From: Klebsormidium nitens
Taxonomy: Eukaryota > Plantae > Klebsormidiophyceae
Length of the DNA: 64,000 nucleotides
Direction of reading: 5' to 3'
Assembly (NCBI GenBank): GCA_000708835.1
Contig: DF237008.1
Location: 124,001 to 188,000, forward strand
Within the stretch, counting starts at the first letter, position 1. Every line of letters starts with the position of its first letter. The notes under the pieces are model-generated. The model saw only the letters and a list, made by a program, of their open reading frames with translations. It had not been told where the DNA came from and did no database searches. The position numbers were made by a program, and so were the translations under genes. Positions 1,997-43,400 of the stretch are shown piece by piece.

Positions 1997-7158
<5,162 letters not shown>

Positions 7159-7630
7159 CTAGTTTGCATCCTCTAACCTATTTCATACGGGGAGCATTTC
7201 CGCGCCCCAAAGAACCATGCCTTTGTTTTGGTCATGATTGCTAGCCAGATTTGAGCTTGCAGCCAAGCATTCTCACACCGGGATGTGTAAAGACAAGACA
7301 AGAACTGCCTCGAACATTCAATCTGTGAAGTCGAATATCTACAACAATACCTATGTAAAACGTCACGACCAGGTATCCACAGCGTGGTGCAATCCAGCAA
7401 GCCTCCCTGCACGACCTGCCCAACTTTCTCACGTCAATGAAAGATCTGAATCTTTGCACTTGCTACCGTGATTTCTCACGAGGCACGAGTCTCTGACGAC
7501 TGAGACCATTGCCACGCTTTCTTCAGAAAAAGCAAGCCAGGGAAGAAGCCATGAAGCGGTTGCAACTTGCAAGAAGACTGTTCAGACTGCTGCACACAAG
7601 CAAGCCTCGACACCTTTTGCACTTTTCCAA

Positions 7631-8129
7631 AGATATTTTGTGGCTGTTTCACTTTTGGGTAACGGTGAACCGGAGGGGAAACCGGCCACAAAAACAGTAC
7701 CGGCTCTTCGTACCGTCTTCCATATATAATGTATTTTGCCTGTTGATGCCACCCGGTGGAACTTCACCTGGGTCCTATGGCCAATGTCGTTCCCGGGGGT
7801 CTTGCCCTGGTCACTGAAAAAGTGGAAACTGATGGATATTTTCGAAAACCTGTCGCTTTTTCAGTTAAACTGACCGACATTGTTAAACGTATGGGTTTAC
7901 CGCTCGGGTGCTCGTCTCCAGGCCTCATCATCAGCAAGGCAAACCTTCAGAAAAGCGCAACCGCCCGACCCCAGTGACACCGGTCAGCCCTTAACCTAGC
8001 TAAAAACTATCTTCTCAGCGACAACTAGATCCAGATATTTTGAGGAGGAGAACCCTCAGAGGACGCACAGGCGAAAGCAGGCTTCAGAAGGTCACTTTCC
8101 TCTGCCAAACCCTGCAAACTAAAATATCT
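7631..8129. promoter_or_regulatory. Evening-element cluster (AAAATATCT): 7631-7639 (-), 8033-8041 (-), 8121-8129 (+)
   Basis: Three exact 9-mers, plus 8/9 matches at 7834 (GGATATTTT), 8219 (AAGATATCT) and 8401 (AAAGTATCT), between the ZTL and TOC1 start codons. Confidence 0.75.
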
Positions 8130-8465
8130 GGTCCAGAAAAGATGCTTTTGCCCGCAGCAGAAGTGCTTTGCAACCAACCCAGCAGCAACTGCACCAAGCT
8201 TGGCCCTTCGTTGACCTGAAGATATCTTTTGTGGCGGCTCTGTTGCTACGCCTTCTGCCAGTTCTGGAGAAGCGGTGATCTTTTGTTGGTCAGTCATAGC
8301 TGCCCGGCAGTGCAACCTCTTTTTGACTTCCTGGTTACAGAAGCCATGAACGAGAAGGGCGCATGCTGAAATGCTCCCATGTCAAAAGTTAGATGACAAG
8401 AAAGTATCTGGGGCTAAACACCTCCTTTGTCACGCTGTTGAAGGGGTGAGTGCAGTCACTCAAAG

Positions 8466-11400
8466 ATGGACGACAAGAGGTTTCACGATGTGACAACGTT
8501 CCACAGAAGCAGCGTCCACATTCTCCTTGCTGACAGGGACTTGCAGACAAGGAAAGAAGTGTTTGAGCTTTTACGCCGCTGCTCTTACAAAGGTGAGGGT
8601 TTGGGCGTCGCACACATTGACCTCATTTAGCTTCTGCGCTCTGTTGAGGGGGCCATGCTTTCGTCTTCTTTCCAGTCAAGGTTGTCAGGCACTGCACAAT
8701 TTTGAAGTTGTGAAGGTGCTCGCCTAGGCCTTCACTAATGCCAGGAAGACTAGGAATGCAGGGCCAAGGACCTTTTCCATGGCCCTTCTCGGTGTTAAAT
8801 TCGACTTCAGGGCCTTGCTAGATCAAAGGCAAAGACCATTGTATGCTGTAAAGGCTCAAGCTACTGGTACCCCCTTCTCACAAGGCAGAGTCAACTGCGA
8901 TCATTCTTCAAAGCCTGTGGATAGAAGACGGGGGATGGCACCAGCAACCACCGGAGGAAGTAGTGCCCGGCCACATTTGACCATGCTTTTCTCGGGCCTC
9001 GCAGTGACTGCAGTTGAGAGCGCCAAGCATGTGCTTGAGGTTTTGCGAGCTGGAGGACCAGCAGTGGATGTGATTCTGTCAGAGGTGGAATTCCCTCATG
9101 GGAAGGGCCTAAAGCTCCTGAAGCACATCATGAGGGAAGAGAAGTTGAAGCAGATTCCTGTCGTCAGTAAGTCTGGGCTTCCTCCTGTTAACGACTCTCA
9201 AAGCTCGTCATTTGGTCTCTACTGGATATAACATGTGTCTTTGGTCTATGAGGCTTCCCGCTAGATTGGTAGTGAGAAAAGAGTTTGCTGCTTTCTCAGC
9301 AGACATAGCAGTGCGAGGTTTTTTTGCGCTGACATCCTTTCTTCTCTGAGACTTCATGTGAAACTCTGAAGTGTCCAGTGAATCAGAGGTCAGATTATTG
9401 GCCCCTGATGTCATTTGTTTCCTGTCTGCTAGTGGCCTCCAAACAACAGCAAGGTCTTGACTCACCTCATACATGTTGGAATTAAAGTTTGGTGTGAAGC
9501 TGTAAGTTAGGTGCGCAACTCAACCTCCACCTTCACTGGGAGGTCCGGAAACCTGAGAGGTGAAAGATTGTTCTCTCCCCTGTTTCAGCTTCTTGGTTGG
9601 GACATGCCAAGAAACTTGTTGAACCGGAGATGAGACAGATTGCTTACCCCTGTGTCTTCCTGCAGTGATGTCACAAAGGGACGAGATGGCTCTGGTGGTC
9701 AAGTCTCTGCGGCTGGGGGCCGCAGACTACCTCGTCAAGCCTCTGAGGACCAATGAGCTGCTCAACCTGTGGACTCACATGTGGCGTCGGAGGAGAATGG
9801 TAAGCCTCTTGGTGTAAGAATCTATTGCAGAGAGGGCGAGATCAGTTGTAAGCTGTCTACAACACTGCTTGCTCAATTGACAGGGGCTATAGTCGGGCGC
9901 TGTCCTGTACTGGAACAGTGTGATTAGGCAGGCTTGAAAAGTGTTTTAGGAAGTCCCTAAAAAGAGGGACTCAGGGAAACCACTCCACCAACAAGGCATG
10001 TTGCAAATGATTCTCATCCCCTCAGCTTACTGCTTCTAGGCCCAAGTCTATCTATGCGGGTTGCAGCTTGCTTGGAAGAAAAGATCGTGGCTCCTCCCCT
10101 TCAAAAACTCTTCTCTCATTTGGTTGCGCATTCTGCAATTCCCGTTAAGAATGGGTGCGCCTCAGTGGAATGTGGCCCCTGACCAATGATTGCGACCAAA
10201 AGCTTTCTCTCATTTGCTCGCCCCTTTCTGCAATTGCAGTTGGGAATGGCTGACCGTCTCAGTGGCCACCCCAACATGAACGGCCCCCCCCTGGATCTCG
10301 CCTTCTCCAACACCAGTGACTCCAACAGCGGGAGCGTTGACATGCTGTCCAACGAGACCGTTGGGGAACGACGGACGCGGCTCGAGGGGCAGGTCAACGA
10401 GGACAATGAACGAGACCGAGAGGATTCAAGAGTGAGTGCTTTTTGAGGGCTCCAGGATTGCACTACTTCATTCTATCTGCTTCCACCAGCAGTGCTGGCC
10501 ATTCCTGAGTGCATGTTGCATTCCATGGGAGTGTGTGACACACTCCCATGGTTGACCAACGTTCTTGGGTTTCTTGCTGCAATAAATTTGGTGCTTTGTA
10601 TATCGTGCGTCTTTCACCTTATTCGGCAACCTTGATCTGATTGGGTTACTGGTTGCATCAGAGGCTTCGAGTGTGGGTTTTTTCCTTCAGCTCACAGGCT
10701 CTGATCATTGGCTCTTCCTGTGTTCAGCCGCAGATGTCCCCAGTCCTGTCTCTGTCATTGAAGCCCTCATCTGAGGGAGTAGAAATCAAGGCTAAAAGTG
10801 GTGAGTATCTCCTAGACCTCTCTGAGCCTCTCAGGGCCCCGTTGATCTGGCCAATGAGTGATTTGGCTGAAACAGTCCACACAGGGAATGCATCATGCAA
10901 CTTGTTCAAACAAGCCCTCAATCTTTGCTAATTGTCTTTTTGCCAGTCACGTCTCCTTCCCAAATCTGATATTTTAGCCTGGTTCAAGTTTCCCTGTGGG
11001 TAGCACACCTTTTCTGTGTAGTAGCCATAGTCATAGCCACATCGTTTGACCCCTTCGCCTGAGGCAGTTGCCTAATCTGGACCATCTTCAAAGTGTGATC
11101 CTCATCTCCCTCCCTCTTATCTGTGTCACATCAATTGTCTTTGCTGATCCGACTACTCCCTCCTCTCTTTTCCAGGCTATGAGATGCTACCCCTCTCCCG
11201 CAAACCTTCCTACGGCTCACCAGCAAAGTTCCGCACCCCTCCTGCCCCACCTCCCAATAACTCTCTGTTCGGCCACACCCCCAAACGGATGAGGGGAGGA
11301 GAGATCGAGAGCAGGGGGTTCAGTTCCTCTGCCCGAGAAGCCCCCGAGCAGACGAGCGGAGAGAGCCAGCCTCCCTTCCACCAACCCCCCCAGCTCCACA

Positions 11401-12827
11401 AGTTTGTGCCGTCGTCGGGTTGGCATCCGAACGGTGCCCAGCACGCCCCCCAGACGGGCAGCAGCAGCACCCCCCACAGGAGCGCAACCGCTGAGGGGGT
11501 CCCTGCCTGGGCAGCTCCCCGAGTCAGCCAGCAACCCCCGGCGCAAGAGCACTTTTCTCGGGGGGCGCTGGTGCACTCCCACGGTCAGGAAATGCAGCAG
11601 AGGGGCCACAACGTGGAGAGGAGGGACAGTCTGCCGACCCCCCCAGAATACGGAAGGACGCGGCACGTAGGGGCGAGCTCGAACGCCGGAAACTCTGCAC
11701 CTCCTCCCGAGTACCACAGGTCAGCGTTCCAGGGGGATGCTCGGAGGGGGACAGAGGGGGGGGAGGGCTCCTGGCAGAATAGTCACCGCCCCCCCTACTT
11801 TCCAGAGCCACAGTTCGCGGGGATGGTTCCGAGCAACATGGGGGCGATGGCACAGCTTCCCCCCCACTTTTACATGCCTCCTCACGTTCAGGGGGGTGGC
11901 CGTGAGTCCAGCAAAGCAGATTACAGCTCGGGGGGGAGCGGAAGGGACCACAGCCCCCCCACAGTTACACCCCCCCGGGAAGAGCGGTCACAGAGTTTTG
12001 GCGAGGCCGCCTCGGGGATGTTCGGGATGCCCCCTCAGATGCAGAACGGGATGCCCCCCCAGATCCCCAACGGAATGGCCTCCAACGGAATCCCCAATGG
12101 AATGGCCCCCCAGCTGCCAAACGGAATGCAGCTGCCCTCCGATCTGCTGATGAACCCGCACCTCGCGATGTTCAACCTCCCCCCCGGGATGATGCCCCCG
12201 ATGCCGCTCCCCCCAGGAATGCCCCCGGGCCTCGCGGCCGGCCTCATGGGCCAGATGCAGTTCTCCCCCTTCTTCCAGAACATGCTCAACCCGCACCTCA
12301 TCCGCCCCCCCGTTCAGAGAGTCCCCACTCCGCCTCCCCCCCCAAACGCCCAGCCTCAGAGCAAGCCCCCCCAGGTTCGAAGCGCGAGGTTTAGCCCCCC
12401 TCCACCCACAACAGGGGGGCCAGTGATCGGTGTCTCAGTAGGGGGGCCGCCGGCCCCCATGTGGCCGTTGCTCCAGGCGGGGGTGGACCGGAAGATGGAC
12501 CAGGCCGAGAGGCGCGAGGCGGCGCTGAGCAAGTTCCGGCAGAAGCGGAAGGACCGGTGCTTCGCGAAGAAGATCCGGTACGCGAGCCGGAAGAAGCTGG
12601 CCGAGGCGCGGCCGCGCATCAAGGGCCAGTTCGTGCGTCAAAAGGAGGGGGGTGCCCCCGGGGGGGGTGGCGACGAAGAAGAACTAGAGGAGGAGGAAGA
12701 AGAGGAGGAGGAGGACGTTGACGAGGAGGAGGAAGACGAGAACAAAGGCGCGCAGCTGCCGGACATCTCGGGCTCGCTGAACGGGAGTAACGACAGCCAG
12801 TCGGCGTTGAATATCGAGAGCCGGTAG
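8466..12827 (+). CDS. TOC1: TIMING OF CAB EXPRESSION 1 / PRR1-type pseudo-response regulator with CCT domain; exons 8466-8592, 9005-9166, 9666-9799, 10240-10431, 10728-10800, 11176-12827
   Basis: [14 protein letters not shown]…LRRCSYK|VTAVESAK…[10 protein letters not shown]…IPVV|MMSQRDE…[29 protein letters not shown]|LGMA carries the TOC1-clade signature. C-terminal [42 protein letters not shown] is a CCT domain. Exon 5 is less certain. Confidence 0.92.
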
Positions 12828-14435: not shown

Positions 14436-17400
14436 TCAACCTTTTCGTTTCGTGTATGAAAGGTATGGGTCTTGTACCGCAGTCAAGACGTCCGGTCGGT
14501 CCTGTTGCTTGAAAGTCAAGCACCGCCGAATGAAGTCCTGCAGAGTATGCAAAGAAACAGGTCAAGCGTTGCCGTTGAGGATCATAAGAACGTACTATCT
14601 CCACGAGAATGCATCGGACTCTCTGATCCTTGTTTTCGGCTGGGCAAGAGGAACACCACATAGCCTGCAAACCGCAAAGCACAGACTCTGGTCACGAGCT
14701 GCACTCAACGATTTGGGGACAATTCTCGAGCATATCGCCGAACTAAGCACAATCGAAGACTTGCATCTTCCTTGTAGAGATGACTGCTCTACAGACAAAT
14801 CACAGATTGATGGCAGAAACACGGCTATAATTCCGCCAAGGCCCGTTCGTCGCCCTACCTTAGCCTCGCTTGACACCGCGGGCTTGGTCGGGAACTCCAC
14901 AGGGGGCGCGCGCAGGATGGTGTCATTGCGCAGCATGGCCTCCTGCGATTGGTCGTCGCCGAACGGCCGTTTTCCGTACAGCATCTGGTACAAGATCACG
15001 CCCGCGGCCCACACGTCCACCTTGGAGGAGATCAGAGGGGGCTGCGTGCCGCGCTCGAAGCACTCGGGGGGAAGATACCTGGGGACAGGATTGTAAAGGT
15101 TTGTAAGTTTGTGGGTTTGTGAGTTCTTTTCCTAAAAACTTTTAAGACTCGGGAGAAAGCTCCCGGACGCTGAAAGCACTCCGCGGAGATGACATTAGCG
15201 GTGGCTGGTTGTCACACTCGAAAACGCTCGGAGGAGGATACCTGGGGACAGGGTTTCAGGAGTTGAAGGTTTCAGAAACTCAAGGGCCCATGTTCAAAAG
15301 ACTGAGGAGAAAATATGAGGACCTGGGTTAATGGAAGGGGGGCTGGCGAACCTGGAAAGAAGGTCTTGGGACTGAGAAGAACGCTCATGATATTTTCCGT
15401 CGAGCGCTTTAAGGAGGATTCTGCGTACGTTCCTATTTGCATACGTTCTTTGGCTGGCTATAAGTTGCCTTAACGCTACACGAGATAGGGCGTCATACTT
15501 TGCAAGTCGGGCAAGCCAAGGTTCTAGGCGGAACCATGGGAGGTTGAAGCACTCTTATCAAAGTTGTACGACAGAAGGCACGTTGGCGGTGGTTATATTG
15601 GAGAATGCTTGTTCACTCATTACATCCCCTAAAGGAGCTCTTCGATCTTTCCACGTTCGTAATTAAATCCCAGCTTGCCCTTACTGATTCGCTCTAGCTT
15701 CAGAGAAGTCGCCGCAACAGAATCCGGAATAGACCTCCAGTAGTCACCGAACCTGACCGCGAGTCCTTCTCTTGACGCAGATTCCTCACCAGTACGTCCC
15801 CGCGCCCTGTGACGTCAGCTCCATCCCCTGGCTGGCCCCCTCATCCTCCATGATCTTGCTTAACCCAAAGTCAGTTATCTTAACCTCGCCCATGGCGTCA
15901 AACAGGATGTTCCCCGGCTTCAGGTCGTAGTGGATAACCCGGTGCTGTGGCTGGTTAAGATACGCTAACCCGGCGAAGATCTGGACTGCCAGGCAGCGCG
16001 CCTCGCGCTCGGGCAGGAACGGCGTCGCCTTGAGAACGGAGTCCAAGTCCTTGCCTGCGGAGGGAAAAATTGGGTTTATTATAAACCCTAAAACTTTGAA
16101 AAGATGGTCAGGTTACGTTTCTTCGGGAAGTATGTGGGTCAGCATTCAGCAGTCCGGTGGAATAGCAACCAAGGCTAGAGTACAGGTCGCTCTCAGCTCG
16201 GAGTCCAAGTTCTTGCCTGCGGAGGGAGTTGTGTTTCGCCATAGTTTGTGATCAGAAAGTCAGCAGACCACATGAGCTTTTGAAGTTTCAGAAGCCGCTA
16301 GTAAAAAAGCCTGCAACATGCTGCATCAGATACTTATCAGCAGGGTTGGCATCTTTTGAAAACATTTGCAGCAACATCAGAGGTCAGAATCTCCCAGCTT
16401 TCTCATCACAAAGGAGCTCACCGTCACAGTATTCGGGGACGGTGCAGAAGGTGTTGTTATCGACCTTAAGATTGGCATCACCCATCGGACAATCTCTAAC
16501 GTGCGTCTCTAAGGTGTGTGTTTTTTTGTTTTTGTAGAGAAGATTTCAACACTTGCGAGCACGCTGACGGATTGAAGCATCCCACCACAGCAAATCAGAG
16601 AAACACAGGAACCTAAAACACTAGAGTTCTCAATGCACCACCGCAGTATGTAAGGACGGTGCAAAAGTTGTTGTGGTCTTAGGATCCGTAGTCCATGACT
16701 AAGACTCCCAGTACCTTGTCGCATGAGGGCATTCGGACACCTCACAATCACCCTGACACCTTAAGCACCCTGCAATAACCAATGAACAAACAATGAGCAG
16801 AACATTAAAAACACCCAAATCTTTGACGCACCGTCGCAGTACTCGAGGACGGTGCAGAAGGTGTTGTTGTCGATCTCGAAGATGCCGAGCAGTCGCACGA
16901 TGCGCGCGTGGTCCAGCTTCTTGTGGATCTCGTACTCGCGGATCGCGTGCCGCACGTAGCTCTGCTTCTTCTCCTCGCTCCACGCAGGGTTCAGCTGGTG
17001 CAGCTTGCACGCCACGTGCCGGTACTCGATCAGGTCGAACGCCTGCAGGAGATAAGATGCAAAGGATTCTGAAATTGGCTCGTATAGATTTTCACGACTT
17101 CGGGTTTCGAAGCTCAAAATTACACTTTCCTTTCGAGGATCCAGATATTTGGAAAGTCTTTGACTCGGAAAGTCGGTTCAGCTGGTGCAGGCTTGCACGC
17201 AACGTGCAGGTACTCAACCAAAGCAAACGCCTAAGAGGAGTCGACAGTCAGACTTTTAGAATCTGTCCGTTCAAAAATCAAGACTTGGGGGCATTGGATT
17301 TCGCTTCAGGTGCACGCAACGTGCCAGTACTCGACAAGGTCAGACCCCTGGAAAGGATGGAGACACAGGGTTTGAAAGCATGCACATGTATATAAGCTAG

Positions 17401-20400
17401 GCCTTTGGAGCCCTGGATCGGCACTTTGAAATTTGGAGGCCAAGGATGTGCGGACTGGAGAGAACATAATCTTATAGGTCCACGGATGAGAGGACAACTG
17501 TGGACCTGCAAGGTCTTGTCCTCCGCAACCAGGCCCGTAAAACCGTTACCTCCAAAAACAAACCTTGAATCATCTAGTTGCTTGGTCGATCCCCTTCTTG
17601 TAGACCTCGCTGAATCCGCCCTTACTTAAACCCAAGAAAAAACGCGACACTCGCAAAAGGTTCCCGCTCTAGTGGCTGCATACCCACCTTGTAGACCTCG
17701 CTGATTCCGCCCTTACTCAAACCCAAGACTAAAGCAATCCCTGCAAGAGTTCCCCGCTCTAGTTGCCGAATGCCCACCTTGTAGACCTCGCTGAAGCCGC
17801 CCTTCCCGAGCAGGTTGAGCAGCGCGTAGCGCTTGTTCAGGATCTGGAAGTGGTTGAAGCGCGACGCGTCCTCGTCGCGGATCCGCTTCATCTCCCGGAT
17901 GTGGCTGCTCTTCTCCGACTTGAACCGCTCCTGGTCCCGTAGAACACCGTCTTCGTCCTGGGGAGAAGTGTTCAGAATGAGTGCTTTGCATGTGGGGGAG
18001 CAAGTCTGGTCGGATTGAGGAGGGTAATGCGGTGAGAAAGCTTTTCGTGAAGCTGCAAAAGTAGAGATGTGGCTGCTCGTCTCCACATTGAACCGCTCCT
18101 AGTCGCGCAGTGAAACGTCTTCGTCCTGGCGGAAAATGGTTAAGATTTGATTCTATTTTGAGAAAGCCCGCATTTGAGGTGCAAATACTTCAGACTTCGC
18201 TGCTCTTCTCTACCTTGAAGCGCTCGGGCTGGTCTTGAAAAGAGACAAACCTGGTGGCTTTGCATTCGAGAGATTCAGTCTGAAGCTTCCTCGGCAGCTT
18301 CTTGTAATTCAGAAGAACGCCCAAACGCCCACAAAGACGAACATCAAAGAAGCTACGCCCCCACCGTTTTGAGCTCGAGCAGGCGCAGCTTCTAGATCGC
18401 TCACGCAGAACCGTCACACCAGTGAGCAGTTGAATTGGGAACAAACGTGAGAGGTAAACCGAAACAACGTCGCGCATCGCGCAAGCTACGCGCACGAGCA
18501 CCCACGTTTTTGAGCGCGAGCACCCACCATTTCGAGCGCGAGTGGCCACCACTGTGAGCGAGAGCGTCCATCCGTTTTCGAGCGCAAGCGCTCGCGTTCG
18601 GAAGCACGAACACCCACCAGTTAAGCGCGAGCGCCCATCCGTTTCGAGCTCGAGCGCCCAACTCTCTGAGCGCGAGCACCCACCCATTCAAAGCGCGAGC
18701 GCCCTCCATTCCGAGCCCGAGCACCCACCTTTTTGAGCGCGAGCAGGCGCAGCTTGTAGATCTCCTCCGTGGCCAGCACCTCGTCCTCGGACGCGCTCGT
18801 GCTCGCGCCGTCCGCGTCCGGAGAGCCCTTCTCTGCAAAGAGAAAAAAGAGCTAGAGTTAGGAACACCGTAGACTATTCCAACCAAGATAGTAAGAGTCT
18901 GTTTACAGGCTTTACTGTCTTGTTGTGTCGAAAGTGTAAGCATGTTGCAAGAGCGACAAAGCTCCTGTGCTCACGCCGTCCGCGTCTGGAGAGCTCTTCT
19001 CTGTCAAGATGGAAAGAATTGGAATTAGGGCACCCCGTTTACTCCTTCAACCAGGATTCTTAGGTTTCCAGTTATAATCTGAAAACAAGCTCTACAGTCT
19101 GAGGTCTTTGTAGGGATGTCGTAAGCTCTGCTGCTCGCTGCGGACGTCCGGCGAACCCTTCCAAGCCGGGACGGAAATAATAGAGTGACGAGTCGACGCC
19201 TGTGACATTTGCGACAAAATTCTTGGAGAACCGGAAGCTGAACAGCTTGATAGAAGAGGGTTTGACAATTAGAGGGTTCACCGAGAATACGATCGGTGCT
19301 GGCGCCGTTCAGAAACTCGAAGCCCCACTCTGCGAGAATACTTCAACCAGCTTGAAGACTTGCCGAACTCACATCCGACTCCTTGAGCTTGAATTCCTTC
19401 AGCTTGATTGTGCAAGCTCATAAATCTCAGCAGATCTTAGATTGGACTCTAATGCAAGAATCGTGAGAGTACCTTTCTTCTTGAGCTGCTTCCTGCGCGC
19501 CTCAATCTGCGCGCGCTGCTCCACGATCGCCAGCTGGCGCGCGGACAGGTCCTTGAACACCTGCCCGTCCTGCCAGACCTCCGTAATCACAGTACCCGCC
19601 CTGCACATATCCATCTTTTTCAGAATCCGCCTCCCCTGAACGGCTTCGTCCAAAACGCAACAACATGTTCACCGGCTTCCGCCGCCGCGTCATGAGCCCC
19701 TTCCAGCCCGAGGTCGTCTCCTCGCTGACGTCACTCGCCCAGGAGTTCGCGCTCTTTGTCAAGTGAGCGCATCGAAACGCTGCATCTTCCTTAGTAGGAG
19801 TCGAGCCAACCGAAGCTCTGGGTTTCACCTCTTTGACCGCTGAGATGCTCACAGGATGATACAATCGAGTTGGATGACACCAACTAATGGAAATCTGATT
19901 CTTTTTTGATGGATCTGAGCGAAGTCGTACAACAGCCAGGGATTTGCATGGCAGTAGGTGATGAAGTCAGGTGATTTCCGATTTGGTTACGGAGCAACGA
20001 GTGGCTGACAGCGGACGCCTCAGGCCATCAGCGCACCAGCACTTTGTGGATCCGGTTTCCCGCTGGATACGCTGGCTGGGATTCAGGCGGCCGGAACAGA
20101 GTCAATGCGTTGAACGCTCTCAACAAGGGAAGCCGGCGCTCACTGCGAGAAAAGGACAATTCAACAAGAAGGAAACAAAGAAATGAAAGGGGACCGGCGC
20201 TCATAACCTGCAAGCTCCCGCCGAACTTGGCCGGTCTGCGATGTCTTTTGCTCCACGTCCGAAAACTTGGGCATTAACTCGGCGAAGGCTGAAGCTCTAC
20301 TTGAGGAAGTTTGTTTATGACGGCAGGCGCGAACCAAGCTCCGAGCTCACCTGATCCATTTGACGTCCCCCAGTCGCACGGAGTCCTCTCGCAACCGTTG

Positions 20401-40400: not shown

Positions 40401-43400
40401 AGCAGTTCATCCCCTCGGTGGACAAGCCCGAGGGCGTGTCGCTCCTCGAGCTCCCGCGCAAGCCCTCCCGCGACCTTAGTCACAGCCCGGTTCGCTCCCC
40501 CCGGCACCGAAAACCCGCTCAGTACACAATTGTTGACGACGACACTCTCGAAGATTCAGATACGGATAGGGAACAAGCTCGCGACAGTCGCGCAAACGGG
40601 GGGATGGATTTGGGGGTGCGTTCAGCGGGGACGCATGGGAGCGGGAAAAACGGATTGCGGGCGGTCGTGGACGATTTGCAGGCGGGGCTGCGAGAGCTGC
40701 CGACGTCGATGCGGAGTGTCATGGTTGTCATGGCGCTGACCTGGGTGAGCACCTTGACACCAGAAATTTCATGGTGTGGCGCATGGCAATGCTTGTTTGG
40801 TGCTGCTCTCATCAAGGCATCCCAAAGCGACGCAGCGGTTGCAACCGGAGGGGAAATGTATTTCGTAGACCATCCTGATCACATCCTGACCCATTTTAGC
40901 CCATTCCCTTCCGGGTAAGATGTTCGGCCAATTTTCAGACCTCCACATCTGAACGCTCCCATTCCTGCGATTGAAACATAAGAACCAAAGCTACACAGTG
41001 CATTCCATCCTGCGAAAGCATCGGCATAGTCTGGGATTCGGCGAGGCTTACGATTTGTAAAAGTGATGTATTTTGAGACGCCTAAGAGATGGGTTGTATA
41101 TAGCCCTATGGATCAAGCCAAAGCAAACTTATTGAGTATTACATTCTTTTTTGTCTTGTTCTTTTTTCTATACCCATCTCCTCTTTTCTTAATAACCCAT
41201 CAAGCGGGCTCTGTCATTGCAATTGTATACACCTCCTGTACTACACTGCGCCAGGTTGATTTAAAAAAGATTATTGCGTACTCGTCTGTGGCTCGAACGA
41301 ACGACTGGCCTCCTCTTTGTTTCGCTCCCGGATTTAAAACTGCTCCTTGACGTCGGCCTCCAATGTTGCCGAATCCTCCGCGTTTTACAAGTGTCTGCTG
41401 TCCAACATGCACTCCCTTTTGTGAGCACCTTCAAGCAATTGTTCACTACCCTCTCTTTCCGCCAATTAGCCTGGTTGCCGTTTCTACTGTTGGACACGAA
41501 CTCGAACAATATTGTATTTCCGCATGCTACTCGCTTTTGAGTACGCTTAACCCTTGACTCTCATTTCCTCTCTTCCCTTCAGTTGGCCTGGTTCCCGTTT
41601 CTGCTATTCGACACGGACTGGATGGGCCGCGAAGTGTACCAAGGGTCGCCCCAGGGCAACAAGGCGCTGGCCAACCTATACCAGCTGGGAGTGCGGGAAG
41701 GCGCGCTCGGCCTGCTACTGCAGTCGGTGAGCAGAAATGCCACCCAGGTCGTTTCCGGGCTATCGTTGCTCTCTCCCAGTCTCCAGGGGACAACTTCCGC
41801 TCCTCCCTGTTCCCGATACGATCTTCAGTCGAGACGCCTCGAGACAAAGCAAAACATCGTTCATTCAAACAAAGCTCCATCCAAAGTTATCTCTCTGCGC
41901 TTCCTAGATCGTGTCTGGGCTGTCGTTCCTGTTCATCGCCCTCTATTTTTAAGGACTGTTTCCGCTGCGGTATTCTCCAAATCTGCTCCTCACTTCTGGA
42001 CGCCTCCAGACAAAGCAATCAAGAGACTCACAAACAGAACTCTGTCAATGTCATCTGCCTCCGCTCCTCAGGTTGTGTCCGGGTTAGCGTCGCTGTTCAT
42101 CGCCCTTTGTTTTCAAGAGACCATTTCGCTGCCGTGCTCTTCAGATTTGCTCCTCACTTCTGGCCGCTCAGACTCGAAGCAAGAACAAACTTACAAGTAA
42201 TGATTCTCCATCCAACTTCATCCTTCAATTTCCAGGTCGTGTCCGGGTTAGCGTCCCTGTTCATCGACCCGCTGTGCCGGTGGCTCGGCAAAGTGCAGGT
42301 GTTGATGGGCGAACGCGCCATCACCCATGAAGTCACTCTGACTGACGTCCGAATCCTGACAGAACATGTTATGCGCTTCCGCAGGTCGTGTGTGGGCTGT
42401 CCTCCGTAATCATCGACTCCGAGTCTCCAAAGGGACTACTTCCGCTCCTCCCTTCATCAGGTACAACCTCCAGTTCGGAAGCCGAGAGAAAGCAACCAAC
42501 AGACACAAAAACAATTGTTTCAATCAACTTTCTGTCCGGTCCGCTCCTCAGGTTGTGTCCGGGTTAGCGTCCCTGTTCATCGACCCGCTGTGCCGGTGGC
42601 TCGGCTCCAGCCGGGTGTGGGCGCTGGGCAACGTCCTGCTCTTCTTCTTCATGGCCGCCACGGCAGTCGTCACGCGCGCGGCAACGACACTGATCCCCGT
42701 TTCGGGGGGGGAGGGGTATGAGCATCCGTCCTGGGTGCGGGGGGCGGCCGTGACGATCTTCGCGTGCCTGGGGGCCCCCTTGGCGGTGAGTTTACCCCCC
42801 ACTTGGGGGACTTTTCATCCAAACTCTGACTCTTAAGCTCACGGTCTGCACAGAGATGGATACCTGAAGGCAGAACGCCATTCCGTTCTGACGATCTGGG
42901 GCGCGAATGTGCAGAAGCGTGTGGGTGTCACAGCCCCTTGCATATCTGCTCGTTGAAAGCGTGTGGGACCATTTCTGACGTTTCGTTTGTTGAAAGCTTT
43001 TGAACCCTCCGTCGAAGCATTGCGTTTTCAGTAAGGCAAGCTTACTCTCGAAATCGAAACACAGTTGCGTGCCGTGTTCAGTCGGCGTTTTCGCAACAGC
43101 GGTTTTGACGAAGAGCATAGAAAACATGCCCAGATGCTTCCATAGGCTATGACCTGGCATTGCAAACTTGCTTCTCCTTCCTCCTTTTTTACTAGGAGAA
43201 AGTGCAGAGTCTGAGCAACCCGTTTTTGATGAAACATGTATAGTGGAGCGTCGTTTATGCATCCTTCCCGCTGGACAGTCGCGATTGGCCTGCGTAATTC
43301 TCTAACCTTGATCCAAAACCCGAGAACTTTCGCTGCGCTGGAAGAGAATGTCGTAAAATCAAGCGTAACTTGGACAGCGGAACTGAAGGTAACGATATCG

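What the first reader, a model, noticed from the sequence alone, without database searches (positions are those of the whole stretch)
7631..8129. Three perfect evening elements in the shared ZTL-TOC1 spacer
Seen: AAAATATCT or its reverse complement occurs exactly at 7631, 8033 and 8121, with three more 8/9 matches. With equal base frequencies about 0.01 hits are expected in 1.3 kb. I noticed no other perfect copy in the window (not an exhaustive scan). Known: the evening element is bound by CCA1/LHY (repression) and RVE8-type (activation) MYBs in the Arabidopsis TOC1 promoter. Inference: the CCA1-TOC1 transcriptional loop is cis-encoded here, and the same elements may impose an evening rhythm on the ZTL-family gene. 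That would be FKF1-like, since Arabidopsis ZTL mRNA is largely constitutive.
Basis: partly seen in the sequence, partly recalled or inferred. Interest (0 to 1): 0.75.

Follow-up and report, generated by a model that had tools for sequence, protein, structure and literature searches.

The report
Conserved evening elements upstream of algal TOC1
The clock gene TOC1 of the alga Klebsormidium nitens has three perfect copies of the plant "evening element" just upstream, and related algae keep them while the surrounding DNA has diverged beyond alignment, so they are almost certainly real clock switches of a known kind; nothing shows that they also control the neighbouring ZTL gene.

Summary
AAAATATCT occurs exactly at 7631(-), 8033(-) and 8121(+). 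These are the only copies in the 64-kb window. About 0.0065 are expected in the 1361-bp spacer (P about 5e-8). The copies are not part of a larger repeat.

The window is Klebsormidium nitens. The flanking genes are the published KfZTL (kfl00059_0220, minus strand) and KfTOC1 (kfl00059_0230, plus strand).

Orthologous loci from two Klebsormidium-like clades keep the sites at fixed distances from the TOC1 start codon. Across the whole two-gene locus, the only non-coding DNA still alignable between clades is 8094-8139. It holds the invariant blocks CTTTCCTCTG and AAAATATCTGGTC (site D). The other sites show turnover, but every lineage keeps three good sites.

Published RNA-seq shows KfTOC1 peaking at dusk (phase 12, p=1e-13, more than 100-fold). 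The best reading is that these are functional CCA1/RVE-type MYB sites gating TOC1. Such sites are already known in Arabidopsis and Ostreococcus, and I found a similar cluster upstream of Marchantia TOC1.

The sites are anchored to TOC1. One lineage tolerates a 1.85-kb insertion between them and ZTL. Marchantia FKF has no proximal evening element.

This is a new member of a known kind, of moderate interest.

The parts
8121..8133 (+). Evening element site D: AAAATATCT inside the invariant block AAAATATCTGGTC, 345 bp upstream of the TOC1 ATG.
   Evidence: Exact match. Identical in all five aligned orthologous spacers (A1). It is the longest k-mer shared by all upstream regions. It lies in the only non-coding HSP between K. 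nitens and clade B across the whole locus.
8095..8104 (+). Conserved block CTTTCCTCTG of unknown role, 17 bp upstream of site D. It may be a partner site or a transcription-start region.
   Evidence: Invariant in all five spacers, at -371 to -422 from the TOC1 ATG. I recognised no known motif in it.
8033..8041 (-). Evening element site C, 433 bp upstream of the TOC1 ATG. With site D it forms an 11-nt inverted pair, AAAATATCTGG.
   Evidence: Exact in K. nitens and L001. Clade B keeps the 8-mer core as CAAATATCT at the same relative position, -455 to -494. The inverted pair is I5.
7834..7842 (-). Site B: the degenerate copy AAAATATCC in K. nitens and L001, but an exact evening element in clade B.
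   Evidence: One-mismatch hit. It shares GATATTTTC plus TCGCTTTT 12-13 nt further on with clade B's exact site. Its position is -631 to -761 from the TOC1 ATG.
7631..7639 (-). Evening element site A, 835 bp from the TOC1 ATG and 527 bp from the ZTL ATG. It is exact only in the K. nitens/L001 clade.
   Evidence: It sits in a block conserved between K. nitens and L001. No exact counterpart exists in clade B.
7105..8465 (.). The 1361-bp spacer, measured ATG to ATG, between the divergent genes KfZTL and KfTOC1.
   Evidence: Start codons are at 7104 (minus strand) and 8466 (plus strand). The same head-to-head layout occurs in L001, L004, L005 and L006, and in L015+L002 if those two contigs are joined. 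No Rfam family matches.
8466..12827 (+). KfTOC1 (kfl00059_0230). Six coding segments lie at about 8466-8592, 9004-9165, 9665-9808, 10240-10431, 10725-10823 and 11175-12827.
   Evidence: tblastn of P0001 against the window. Pfam Response_reg and CCT hits on single exons. Named in the Linde 2017 supplement.
1997..7104 (-). KfZTL (kfl00059_0220), a LOV-F-box-Kelch protein. The LOV exon 1 is 6757-7104 and the Kelch exon lies within 1997-3097.
   Evidence: Translation, Pfam PAS, F-box and Kelch hits, the KfZTL alignment in the Linde 2017 supplement, and about 75% identity to MpFKF and other ZTL-family proteins.

Best explanation
The three exact evening elements, plus one degenerate fourth site, are real cis-regulatory sites in the promoter region of KfTOC1. 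The most likely mechanism is the one known from Arabidopsis and Ostreococcus. The dawn-expressed SHAQKYF-type MYB KfCCA1 binds AAAATATCT and keeps TOC1 off in the morning. The LCL/RVE-clade MYB KfRVE probably uses the same sites to activate transcription in the afternoon. The result is the sharp dusk peak of KfTOC1 mRNA.

Shown here: the sites exist, they are far beyond chance, they are under purifying selection, they sit at fixed distances from the TOC1 ATG, and TOC1 mRNA peaks at dusk.

Inferred: which proteins bind, the sign of the regulation, and that the rhythm is clock-driven rather than light-driven.

The sites belong primarily to TOC1. Any effect on the divergent ZTL gene is open and, on present evidence, less likely than not.
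For: 1. Statistics. Three exact copies lie within 499 bp and none elsewhere in 64 kb. The expected number in the spacer is 0.0065, giving P about 5e-8.

2. Conservation in a close relative. L001 (TOC1 81% identical) has the same four sites, in the same orientation and spacing, in a spacer that is only 62% identical overall.

3. Conservation in a more distant clade. In L002/L003, L004 and L005-L007 (TOC1 last exon about 53-57% identical, introns not alignable) there are three sites at matching distances from the TOC1 ATG: D at -345 to -396, C at -433 to -494 and B at -631 to -761.

4. Unbiased tests. Of the 11 9-mers shared by three upstream regions, 8 overlap evening elements. In the five-way alignment the only long invariant runs are CTTTCCTCTG and AAAATATCTGGTC. 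blastn of the whole 11-kb two-gene locus between K. nitens and L004 returns exons plus a single non-coding HSP, 8094-8139.

5. Turnover with constant number. Site A is exact only in clade A. Site B is exact only in clade B. Site C is weakened to the 8-mer core in clade B. Each lineage still keeps three sites with at least the 8-mer core.

6. Expression. In Ferrari 2019, Supplementary Data 6, kfl00059_0230 has rhythm p = 1.15e-13 and phase 12. TPM is about 1-3 at L1-L5, 215-289 at L11 and about 10 at D7.

7. Trans factors. K. nitens has one CCA1-clade MYB (kfl00255_0190) and one LCL-clade RVE (kfl00237_0160). Genes of the CCA1/LHY/RVE family peak at the end of night or start of day in all species studied.

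8. Precedent. CCA1 represses TOC1 through an evening element in Arabidopsis and Ostreococcus, and RVE8 uses the same element to activate. Marchantia MpTOC1 has three evening-element cores within 950 bp upstream.
Against: - No binding, reporter or mutation data exist for this alga.
- The expression data are from light-dark cycles only, so the dusk peak could be light-driven.
- Transcription start sites are unknown. Sites C and D could lie in the 5' UTR, in which case conservation might partly reflect an RNA feature.
- The invariant flank (CTGGTC) and the neighbouring CTTTCCTCTG block are not part of the canonical element. They could mean a different or composite factor.
- The genome-wide frequency of the element in K. 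nitens promoters could not be measured. Only 64 kb, plus about 100 kb from relatives, was available as background.
- The relatives are unnamed metagenome and SRA assemblies, so their divergence is judged from the sequences alone.
Confidence: 0.75

Rival explanations
1. Shared bidirectional clock enhancer. The same evening elements also drive the divergent KfZTL gene, so the F-box photoreceptor and its presumed substrate TOC1 are transcribed together at dusk. That would be FKF1-like rather than ZTL-like behaviour.
For: - The head-to-head arrangement with a spacer of 1.36-1.48 kb is kept in both Klebsormidium-like clades.
- Site A is closer to the ZTL ATG (527 bp) than to the TOC1 ATG (835 bp).
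- By established knowledge from Arabidopsis promoters, evening elements work in either orientation.
Against: - Site distances are conserved to the TOC1 ATG but vary to the ZTL ATG: site D lies 1000-1115 bp away, and about 2940 bp away in the L002+L015 lineage.
- Site A, the ZTL-nearest one, is the least conserved.
- One lineage carries a 1846-bp insertion between the element cluster and the ZTL-proximal 400 bp.
- No relative has any evening element, even the 7-mer core, in the ZTL-proximal 400-700 bp, and L015 has none in 16 kb.
- MpFKF has no evening element within 4.8 kb upstream.
- KfZTL expression data were not retrievable.
Confidence: 0.3
2. The conserved AAAATATCT-containing blocks are bound by a factor other than CCA1/RVE. 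Candidates are another MYB-related or GARP protein, or a composite site with the CTTTCCTCTG block. The resemblance to the evening element would then be only partial.
For: - The invariant block extends beyond the canonical 9-mer (AAAATATCTGGTC) and is paired with an invariant CTTTCCTCTG 17 bp away.
- Two of the three exact sites share the extension AAAATATCTGG.
Against: - The part common to all four site positions and all lineages is exactly the canonical element or its 8-mer core. The flanks differ between sites A, B, C and D.
- The target gene and its dusk phase are the textbook context of the element.
- No LUX-binding site, G-box, CCA1-binding site or TCP site is conserved in the spacer.
Confidence: 0.1
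3. Chance or compositional artefact, or remnants of a repeat or transposon, with no regulatory role.
For: Only the general point that short A/T-rich words recur in promoters. The genome-wide background for this alga was not available.
Against: - P is about 5e-8 under local composition.
- There are no other copies in the other 62.6 kb of the window.
- The sites are not embedded in a larger repeat.
- They are conserved in position and orientation in relatives whose introns and the rest of the spacer are no longer alignable.
Confidence: 0.02

Closest known systems
Evening element in the Arabidopsis TOC1/PRR1 promoter (CCA1/LHY repression, RVE8/LCL activation)
   Same: The 9-mer AAAATATCT is identical. 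The target gene is the same (a TOC1-clade PRR). The mRNA phase is the same (dusk). The alga has both a CCA1-clade and an LCL/RVE-clade MYB.
   Different: There are three exact sites plus one degenerate site within 500 bp, in mixed orientation. From memory, unchecked here, the Arabidopsis TOC1 promoter is described with a single canonical element. The spacer is shared with a divergent ZTL-family gene. An invariant flanking extension and a CTTTCCTCTG partner block are present. Binding is untested.
Evening element of the Ostreococcus tauri TOC1 promoter (Corellou et al. 2009)
   Same: It is an algal TOC1 whose promoter element is bound by CCA1 and is needed for circadian TOC1 expression, as reported in PMC3130137 and PMC11539686. 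This shows that the CCA1-element-TOC1 link predates land plants.
   Different: Ostreococcus is a chlorophyte with a two-gene clock and no ZTL. Klebsormidium is a streptophyte with most land-plant clock genes. I did not inspect the Ostreococcus sequence itself.
Evening-element cluster upstream of Marchantia polymorpha MpTOC1 (seen here in L014)
   Same: Two exact 9-mers and one 8-mer core lie within 950 bp upstream of a TOC1-clade gene. No other 8-mer core occurs in the 16 kb fetched.
   Different: The cluster lies 1.5-2.4 kb upstream of the ATG. MpFKF is not adjacent. Marchantia lacks a CCA1-clade gene. There is no sequence homology with the Klebsormidium spacer beyond the motif.
Genetic linkage of clock genes (CCA1-PRR9, RVE4-PRR7; Michael 2022, PMC9516744)
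   Same: It is the same idea, that physically linked clock partners form stable regulatory units with evening-element or G-box cross-regulation.
   Different: That paper does not mention Klebsormidium or a ZTL-TOC1 pair (0 occurrences of 'Klebsormidium'). Here the pair is an F-box protein and its presumed substrate, not a MYB and a PRR.

Membership tests
Evening element (EE) cis-motif | Sequence AAAATATCT (core AATATCT), in either orientation | tested here: met
   Three exact 9-mers at 7631, 8033 and 8121, and one 8/9 copy at 7834.
Evening element (EE) cis-motif | Located upstream of a gene whose mRNA peaks in the evening | tested here: met
   The sites lie 345-835 bp upstream of the KfTOC1 ATG. 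kfl00059_0230 has phase 12, p = 1.15e-13, with its peak at L11-D1. The data are from light-dark cycles only, and the transcription start site is unknown.
Evening element (EE) cis-motif | Over-represented and evolutionarily constrained relative to surrounding non-coding DNA | tested here: met
   P is about 5e-8. Site D is invariant in five spacers, and it lies in the only non-coding HSP between the clades.
Evening element (EE) cis-motif | Bound by CCA1/LHY/RVE SHAQKYF-type MYB proteins | not testable with these tools
   KfCCA1 and KfRVE exist. No binding data exist.
Evening element (EE) cis-motif | Required for evening-phased, clock-controlled transcription | not testable with these tools
   This needs reporter mutagenesis and free-running conditions.
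TOC1-clade pseudo-response regulator (the flanking plus-strand gene) | N-terminal receiver-like domain plus C-terminal CCT motif, grouping with TOC1/PRR1 rather than PRR3/5/7/9 | tested here: met
   Pfam Response_reg and CCT hits on single exons. The best named hits outside Klebsormidium are mostly APRR1/TOC1 or PRR1. The gene is placed in the TOC1 clade as KfTOC1 by Linde 2017. I built no tree of my own.
ZTL/FKF1/LKP2 family (the flanking minus-strand gene) | LOV domain, F-box and Kelch repeats in one protein | tested here: met
   The LOV exon (PAS fold, E = 6e-4, below the Pfam cut-off) matches the published KfZTL alignment. There is a weak F-box hit and a strong Kelch hit (E = 1e-60). The Kelch exon is about 75% identical to MpFKF and other ZTL-family proteins.
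Bidirectional promoter | Two divergent genes whose start sites are close (usually under 1 kb) and which share regulatory elements and are co-expressed | tested here: inconclusive
   The genes are divergent, with 1361 bp from ATG to ATG, and the arrangement is conserved. Transcription start sites are unknown and KfZTL expression was not retrievable. The sites are anchored to TOC1, and an insertion is tolerated on the ZTL side.

The most novel reading that the evidence does not exclude
The conserved evening-element cluster is a shared, bidirectional clock enhancer. It co-transcribes the blue-light F-box receptor ZTL and its degradation substrate TOC1 at dusk. This would give an ancient 'substrate plus degrader' cassette in the streptophyte ancestor, later dispersed in land plants. 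The head-to-head pairing would then be selected for co-regulation, which would explain its retention in both Klebsormidium-like clades.
Probability: 0.25. Interest if true: 0.6.

Novelty: new member of a known kind. Interest (0 to 1): 0.4.

Why it matters
The CCA1-evening element-TOC1 link is the founding loop of the plant clock. It has been shown in Arabidopsis and in the chlorophyte Ostreococcus.

Finding the element in multiple selectively maintained copies upstream of TOC1 in a streptophyte alga fills the gap between those two. A comparable cluster lies upstream of Marchantia TOC1. Together these argue that the cis-logic, and not just the genes, was inherited continuously.

None of the five papers in the searched library that mention both Klebsormidium and the evening element, as far as I read them, reports these sites. 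Full-text searches for the two locus identifiers returned no paper.

The finding also gives four defined sites and a compact 1.4-kb divergent spacer. That is a ready-made test object for asking whether a clock photoreceptor and its substrate are co-regulated.

Tried and rejected
- **Metagenome scan.** The search for related loci with P0001 was swamped by a poly-Glu pattern. It returned only an unrelated CCT protein (L008) and a bacterial response regulator from a gut-metagenome contig (L009). Neither was analysed further, apart from L008's inclusion in the exon and motif scan and the inclusion of both, with every other fetched locus, in the subject set of the insertion-copy blastn.
- **Translocation reading.** I first read L002/L003 as a lineage where ZTL had moved away from TOC1. 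I rejected this when L015, the ZTL contig from the same sample, was found to overlap the start of L002 by 55 bp at 100% identity. The difference is a 1846-bp insertion, not a translocation. The join rests on an assembly-graph overlap and is an assumption.
- **More distant ZTL first exons.** L010-L013 have too little upstream DNA, come from unknown organisms and carry no TOC1 exon. The single evening element in L012 carries no weight.
- **Negative scans.** Rfam and the bacterial promoter/terminator scan found nothing. The latter is irrelevant for a eukaryote.
- **Symmetric motif.** GC(G/T)GAAATGCTCCC lies about 97 bp upstream of both ATGs in K. nitens, but it is absent from all relatives, so I treat it as chance.
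- **KfZTL, KfCCA1 and KfRVE expression.** These rows are not in the truncated stored copy of the supplement. Searches for the locus ids in the paper library returned nothing.
- **Diphasiastrum TOC1.** The look-up failed.
- **Spliced models.** Exons were searched one by one by reference, and exon positions were mapped with the database protein P0001.

Full report
**Observation**

AAAATATCT or its reverse complement occurs exactly at 7631-7639 (-), 8033-8041 (-) and 8121-8129 (+). There is no other copy in the 64,000-base window. Dinucleotide shuffles of the window give a mean of 0.38 copies, and none of 100 shuffles reaches three.

A first-order Markov model of the spacer's own composition (GC 0.49) expects 0.0065 copies in its 1361 bp. 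That gives P(>=3) = 4.5e-8.

Allowing one mismatch, 8 of the 19 hits in the window fall between 7631 and 8409. Beyond the three exact sites there are four further positions, not three: 7834, 8004, 8219/8220 and 8401.

The copies share at most 13 nt of flank (AGATATTTTG[T/A]GG), so they are not pieces of a duplicated segment or a transposon. The other 9-mers that occur three times within 500 bp in this window all lie in repeat arrays or in TOC1's own coding sequence.

**What flanks the sites**

The window is Klebsormidium nitens. The 547-aa ORF at 11184-12827 is 100% identical to the C-terminal part of P0001, the 779-aa 'pseudo-response regulator 1 [Klebsormidium nitens]'.

Mapping P0001 back to the window gives six coding segments, starting with an ATG at 8466. 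Single exons hit Pfam Response_reg and CCT.

On the minus strand, the exon at 6757-7104 encodes a LOV N-terminus (…[22 protein letters not shown]…). An F-box-like piece and a strong Kelch exon (1997-3097, E = 1e-60) lie downstream.

Both N-termini match the KfTOC1 and KfZTL rows of the alignments in Linde et al. 2017 (PMC5638080). That paper lists them as kfl00059_0230 (TOC1 clade) and kfl00059_0220 (ZTL). It also records that K. nitens has one CCA1-clade MYB, one LCL/RVE-clade MYB, one TOC1 and one ZTL-family gene.

So the two genes are divergent neighbours, with 1361 bp between their start codons.

**Related loci**

Exon-level ORFs from public assemblies led to orthologous loci.

- **Clade A.** L001 (Logan SRR23617307; TOC1 last exon 81% identical) has ZTL exon 1 and TOC1 exon 1 head to head, 1370 bp apart. 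It has exact evening elements at 3659(-), 4047(-) and 4135(+), and AAAATATCC at 3860(-). This is the same four sites, orientations and spacings as the window, although the spacers are only 62% identical.
- **Clade B.** This more distant group comprises L004 (a 172-kb JGI contig), L005-L007 (Logan SRR14092358-60) and L002/L003 (JGI). Its TOC1 last exon is about 53-57% identical to K. nitens, and its receiver exons are 88-98% identical. The head-to-head layout is kept, with spacers of 1458-1475 bp. There are three sites: an exact one at -355 to -396 from the TOC1 ATG, CAAATATCT (8-mer core intact) at -455 to -494, and an exact one at -721 to -761.

**Is this constraint or just relatedness?**

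Three unbiased checks all point to constraint.

1. Of the 11 9-mers shared by the upstream regions of K. nitens, L001 and L002, eight overlap evening elements. The longest shared word is AAAATATCTGGTC. Shuffled L002 shares 2.5 such 9-mers on average.
2. In a five-way alignment, the only long invariant runs are CTTTCCTCTG (window 8095-8104) and AAAATATCTGGTC (8121-8133).
3. A sensitive blastn of the whole two-gene locus of K. nitens against L004 returns the exons of both genes plus one non-coding HSP, 8094-8139. Introns and the rest of the spacer no longer align.

The other sites show turnover.

- Site A (7631) is exact only in clade A.
- Site B (7834) is degenerate in clade A but exact in clade B. 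Homology is supported by the shared GATATTTTC…TCGCTTTT context.
- Site C (8033) is exact in clade A and reduced to the 8-mer core in clade B.

Each lineage therefore keeps three sites with at least the 8-mer core. This is the pattern expected for selection on a cluster of transcription-factor sites.

No G-box, LUX-binding site, CCA1-binding site, TCP site or telo-box is conserved in the spacer. No Rfam family matches.

**Expression**

In Supplementary Data 6 of Ferrari et al. 2019 (PMC6374488; 12 h light/12 h dark, sampled every 2 h in triplicate), kfl00059_0230 has rhythm p = 1.15e-13 and phase 12. TPM is about 1-3 at L1-L5, 27-53 at L7, 215-289 at L11, 203-252 at D1 and about 10 at D7.

That is a sharp dusk peak of more than 100-fold, with near-silence in the morning. 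It is what morning repression through evening elements predicts. The same paper states that genes of the CCA1/LHY/RVE family peak at the end of night or start of day in all species studied.

The rows for KfZTL, KfCCA1 and KfRVE are not in the truncated copy held.

**Mechanism**

The best-supported reading is the classical one. KfCCA1 binds the elements and represses KfTOC1 after dawn. KfRVE probably activates through the same sites later in the day.

The literature supports this for other species.

- CCA1 represses TOC1 via the evening element in Arabidopsis and Ostreococcus (PMC3130137, PMC11539686).
- CCA1 binds the PRR1/5/7/9 promoters via the element (PMC9516744).
- RVE8 uses the same element to activate evening genes (PMC5638080).

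The Marchantia MpTOC1 locus (L014) also carries two exact elements and one 8-mer core within 950 bp, 1.5-2.4 kb upstream of its ATG. No other 8-mer core occurs in the 16 kb fetched, where 0.045 exact 9-mers and 0.15 8-mer cores are expected in the 3 kb upstream.

Binding, the sign of regulation and clock (as opposed to light) control are inferred for K. nitens, not shown.

**The ZTL side**

I found no support for it.

- Site positions are conserved relative to the TOC1 ATG and drift relative to the ZTL ATG.
- The ZTL-nearest site, A, is the least conserved.
- The ZTL-proximal 400-700 bp of every relative lacks even the 7-mer core.
- In the organism of L002/L003, the ZTL contig L015 overlaps the start of L002 by 55 bp at 100% identity. 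Joining them gives a 3334-bp spacer. A 1846-bp, 42% GC insertion lies between the ZTL-proximal about 400 bp and the element cluster. All three sites remain on the TOC1 side. The join is an assumption based on an assembly-graph overlap.
[quoted passage not shown] Yet its locus L016 has no evening element within 4.8 kb upstream.

None of this excludes bidirectional action, because evening elements can act at a distance and in either orientation. I put it at about 0.25-0.3.

**Comparison with what is known, and novelty**

The element, its target gene and the phase are the textbook case. The link is already established in both a chlorophyte and angiosperms, so its presence in a streptophyte alga is expected rather than surprising.

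What is new here:

- the sites themselves in K. nitens. Among the five papers in the library that mention both Klebsormidium and the evening element, none, as far as I read them, describes these sites, and full-text searches for the two locus ids returned nothing;
- the four-position cluster, with one invariant site, turnover at the others, and an unexplained invariant partner block CTTTCCTCTG;
- its location in a conserved divergent spacer shared with the ZTL-family gene.

I class this as a new member of a known kind and score interest at 0.4. The head-to-head gene pair was also noted separately by the scan on this same window (s1-285417). I confirmed the pairing and its conservation in relatives.

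Noticed in passing
window 8095-8104: CTTTCCTCTG lies 17 bp upstream of evening-element site D. It is invariant in all five Klebsormidium-like spacers, at -371 to -422 from the TOC1 ATG. I recognised no known motif in it. It could be a partner site or the TOC1 start region. In Marchantia, CTTTCCTC follows one MpTOC1 evening element by 4 nt (L014, about 4528), which may be coincidence.
   Followed up: partly
L002:1-1561 plus L015:56-340: A 1846-bp insertion (GC 42%) sits in the ZTL-TOC1 spacer of one clade-B organism, in place of 41 bp in L004 (9435-9475). It has no terminal inverted repeats, no evening elements and no other copy in the held sequences. GTACCTACCT occurs near both junctions. The contig join rests on a 55-bp, 100% end overlap.
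   Followed up: partly
L014:3582-4536 (Marchantia polymorpha MpTOC1 upstream): Two exact evening elements and one 8-mer core lie within 950 bp, 1.5-2.4 kb upstream of the MpTOC1 ATG. No other 8-mer core occurs in the 16 kb fetched. Marchantia lacks a CCA1-clade gene, so these would be RVE targets.
   Followed up: partly
L016 (Marchantia polymorpha MpFKF locus): There is no evening element within 4.8 kb upstream of the MpFKF ATG. The only copy is at L016:1149, beyond a neighbouring gene. The largest contig listed for MpFKF (30,125,287 bp) has the same length as the MpTOC1 record AP031353.1. The two genes may therefore share a chromosome, but they are not adjacent.
   Followed up: no
window 7190-7203 and 8365-8378: GC(G/T)GAAATGCTCCC occurs in sense orientation about 97-100 bp upstream of both the ZTL and the TOC1 start codons in K. 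nitens. It is absent at these positions in L001, L004 and L005, so it is probably chance.
   Followed up: yes
window 8031-8041 and 8121-8131: Sites C and D form a perfect 11-nt inverted pair (AAAATATCTGG) separated by 79 nt. The start-to-start spacing of 88-101 bp is kept in all relatives.
   Followed up: partly
L012:385 (ENA ERZ1034429 contig, GC 39%): A distant ZTL-like first exon (45% identical) from an unknown organism has one exact evening element about 1.2 kb upstream and no TOC1 exon nearby. It is a single hit in A/T-rich DNA and carries no weight.
   Followed up: no
window 16000-19000 and 41000-43000: Most 9-mers that recur three or more times within 500 bp in this window fall in these two regions. 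They match the intronic repeat arrays noted by other first-stage findings (TLK and SUT introns).
   Followed up: no
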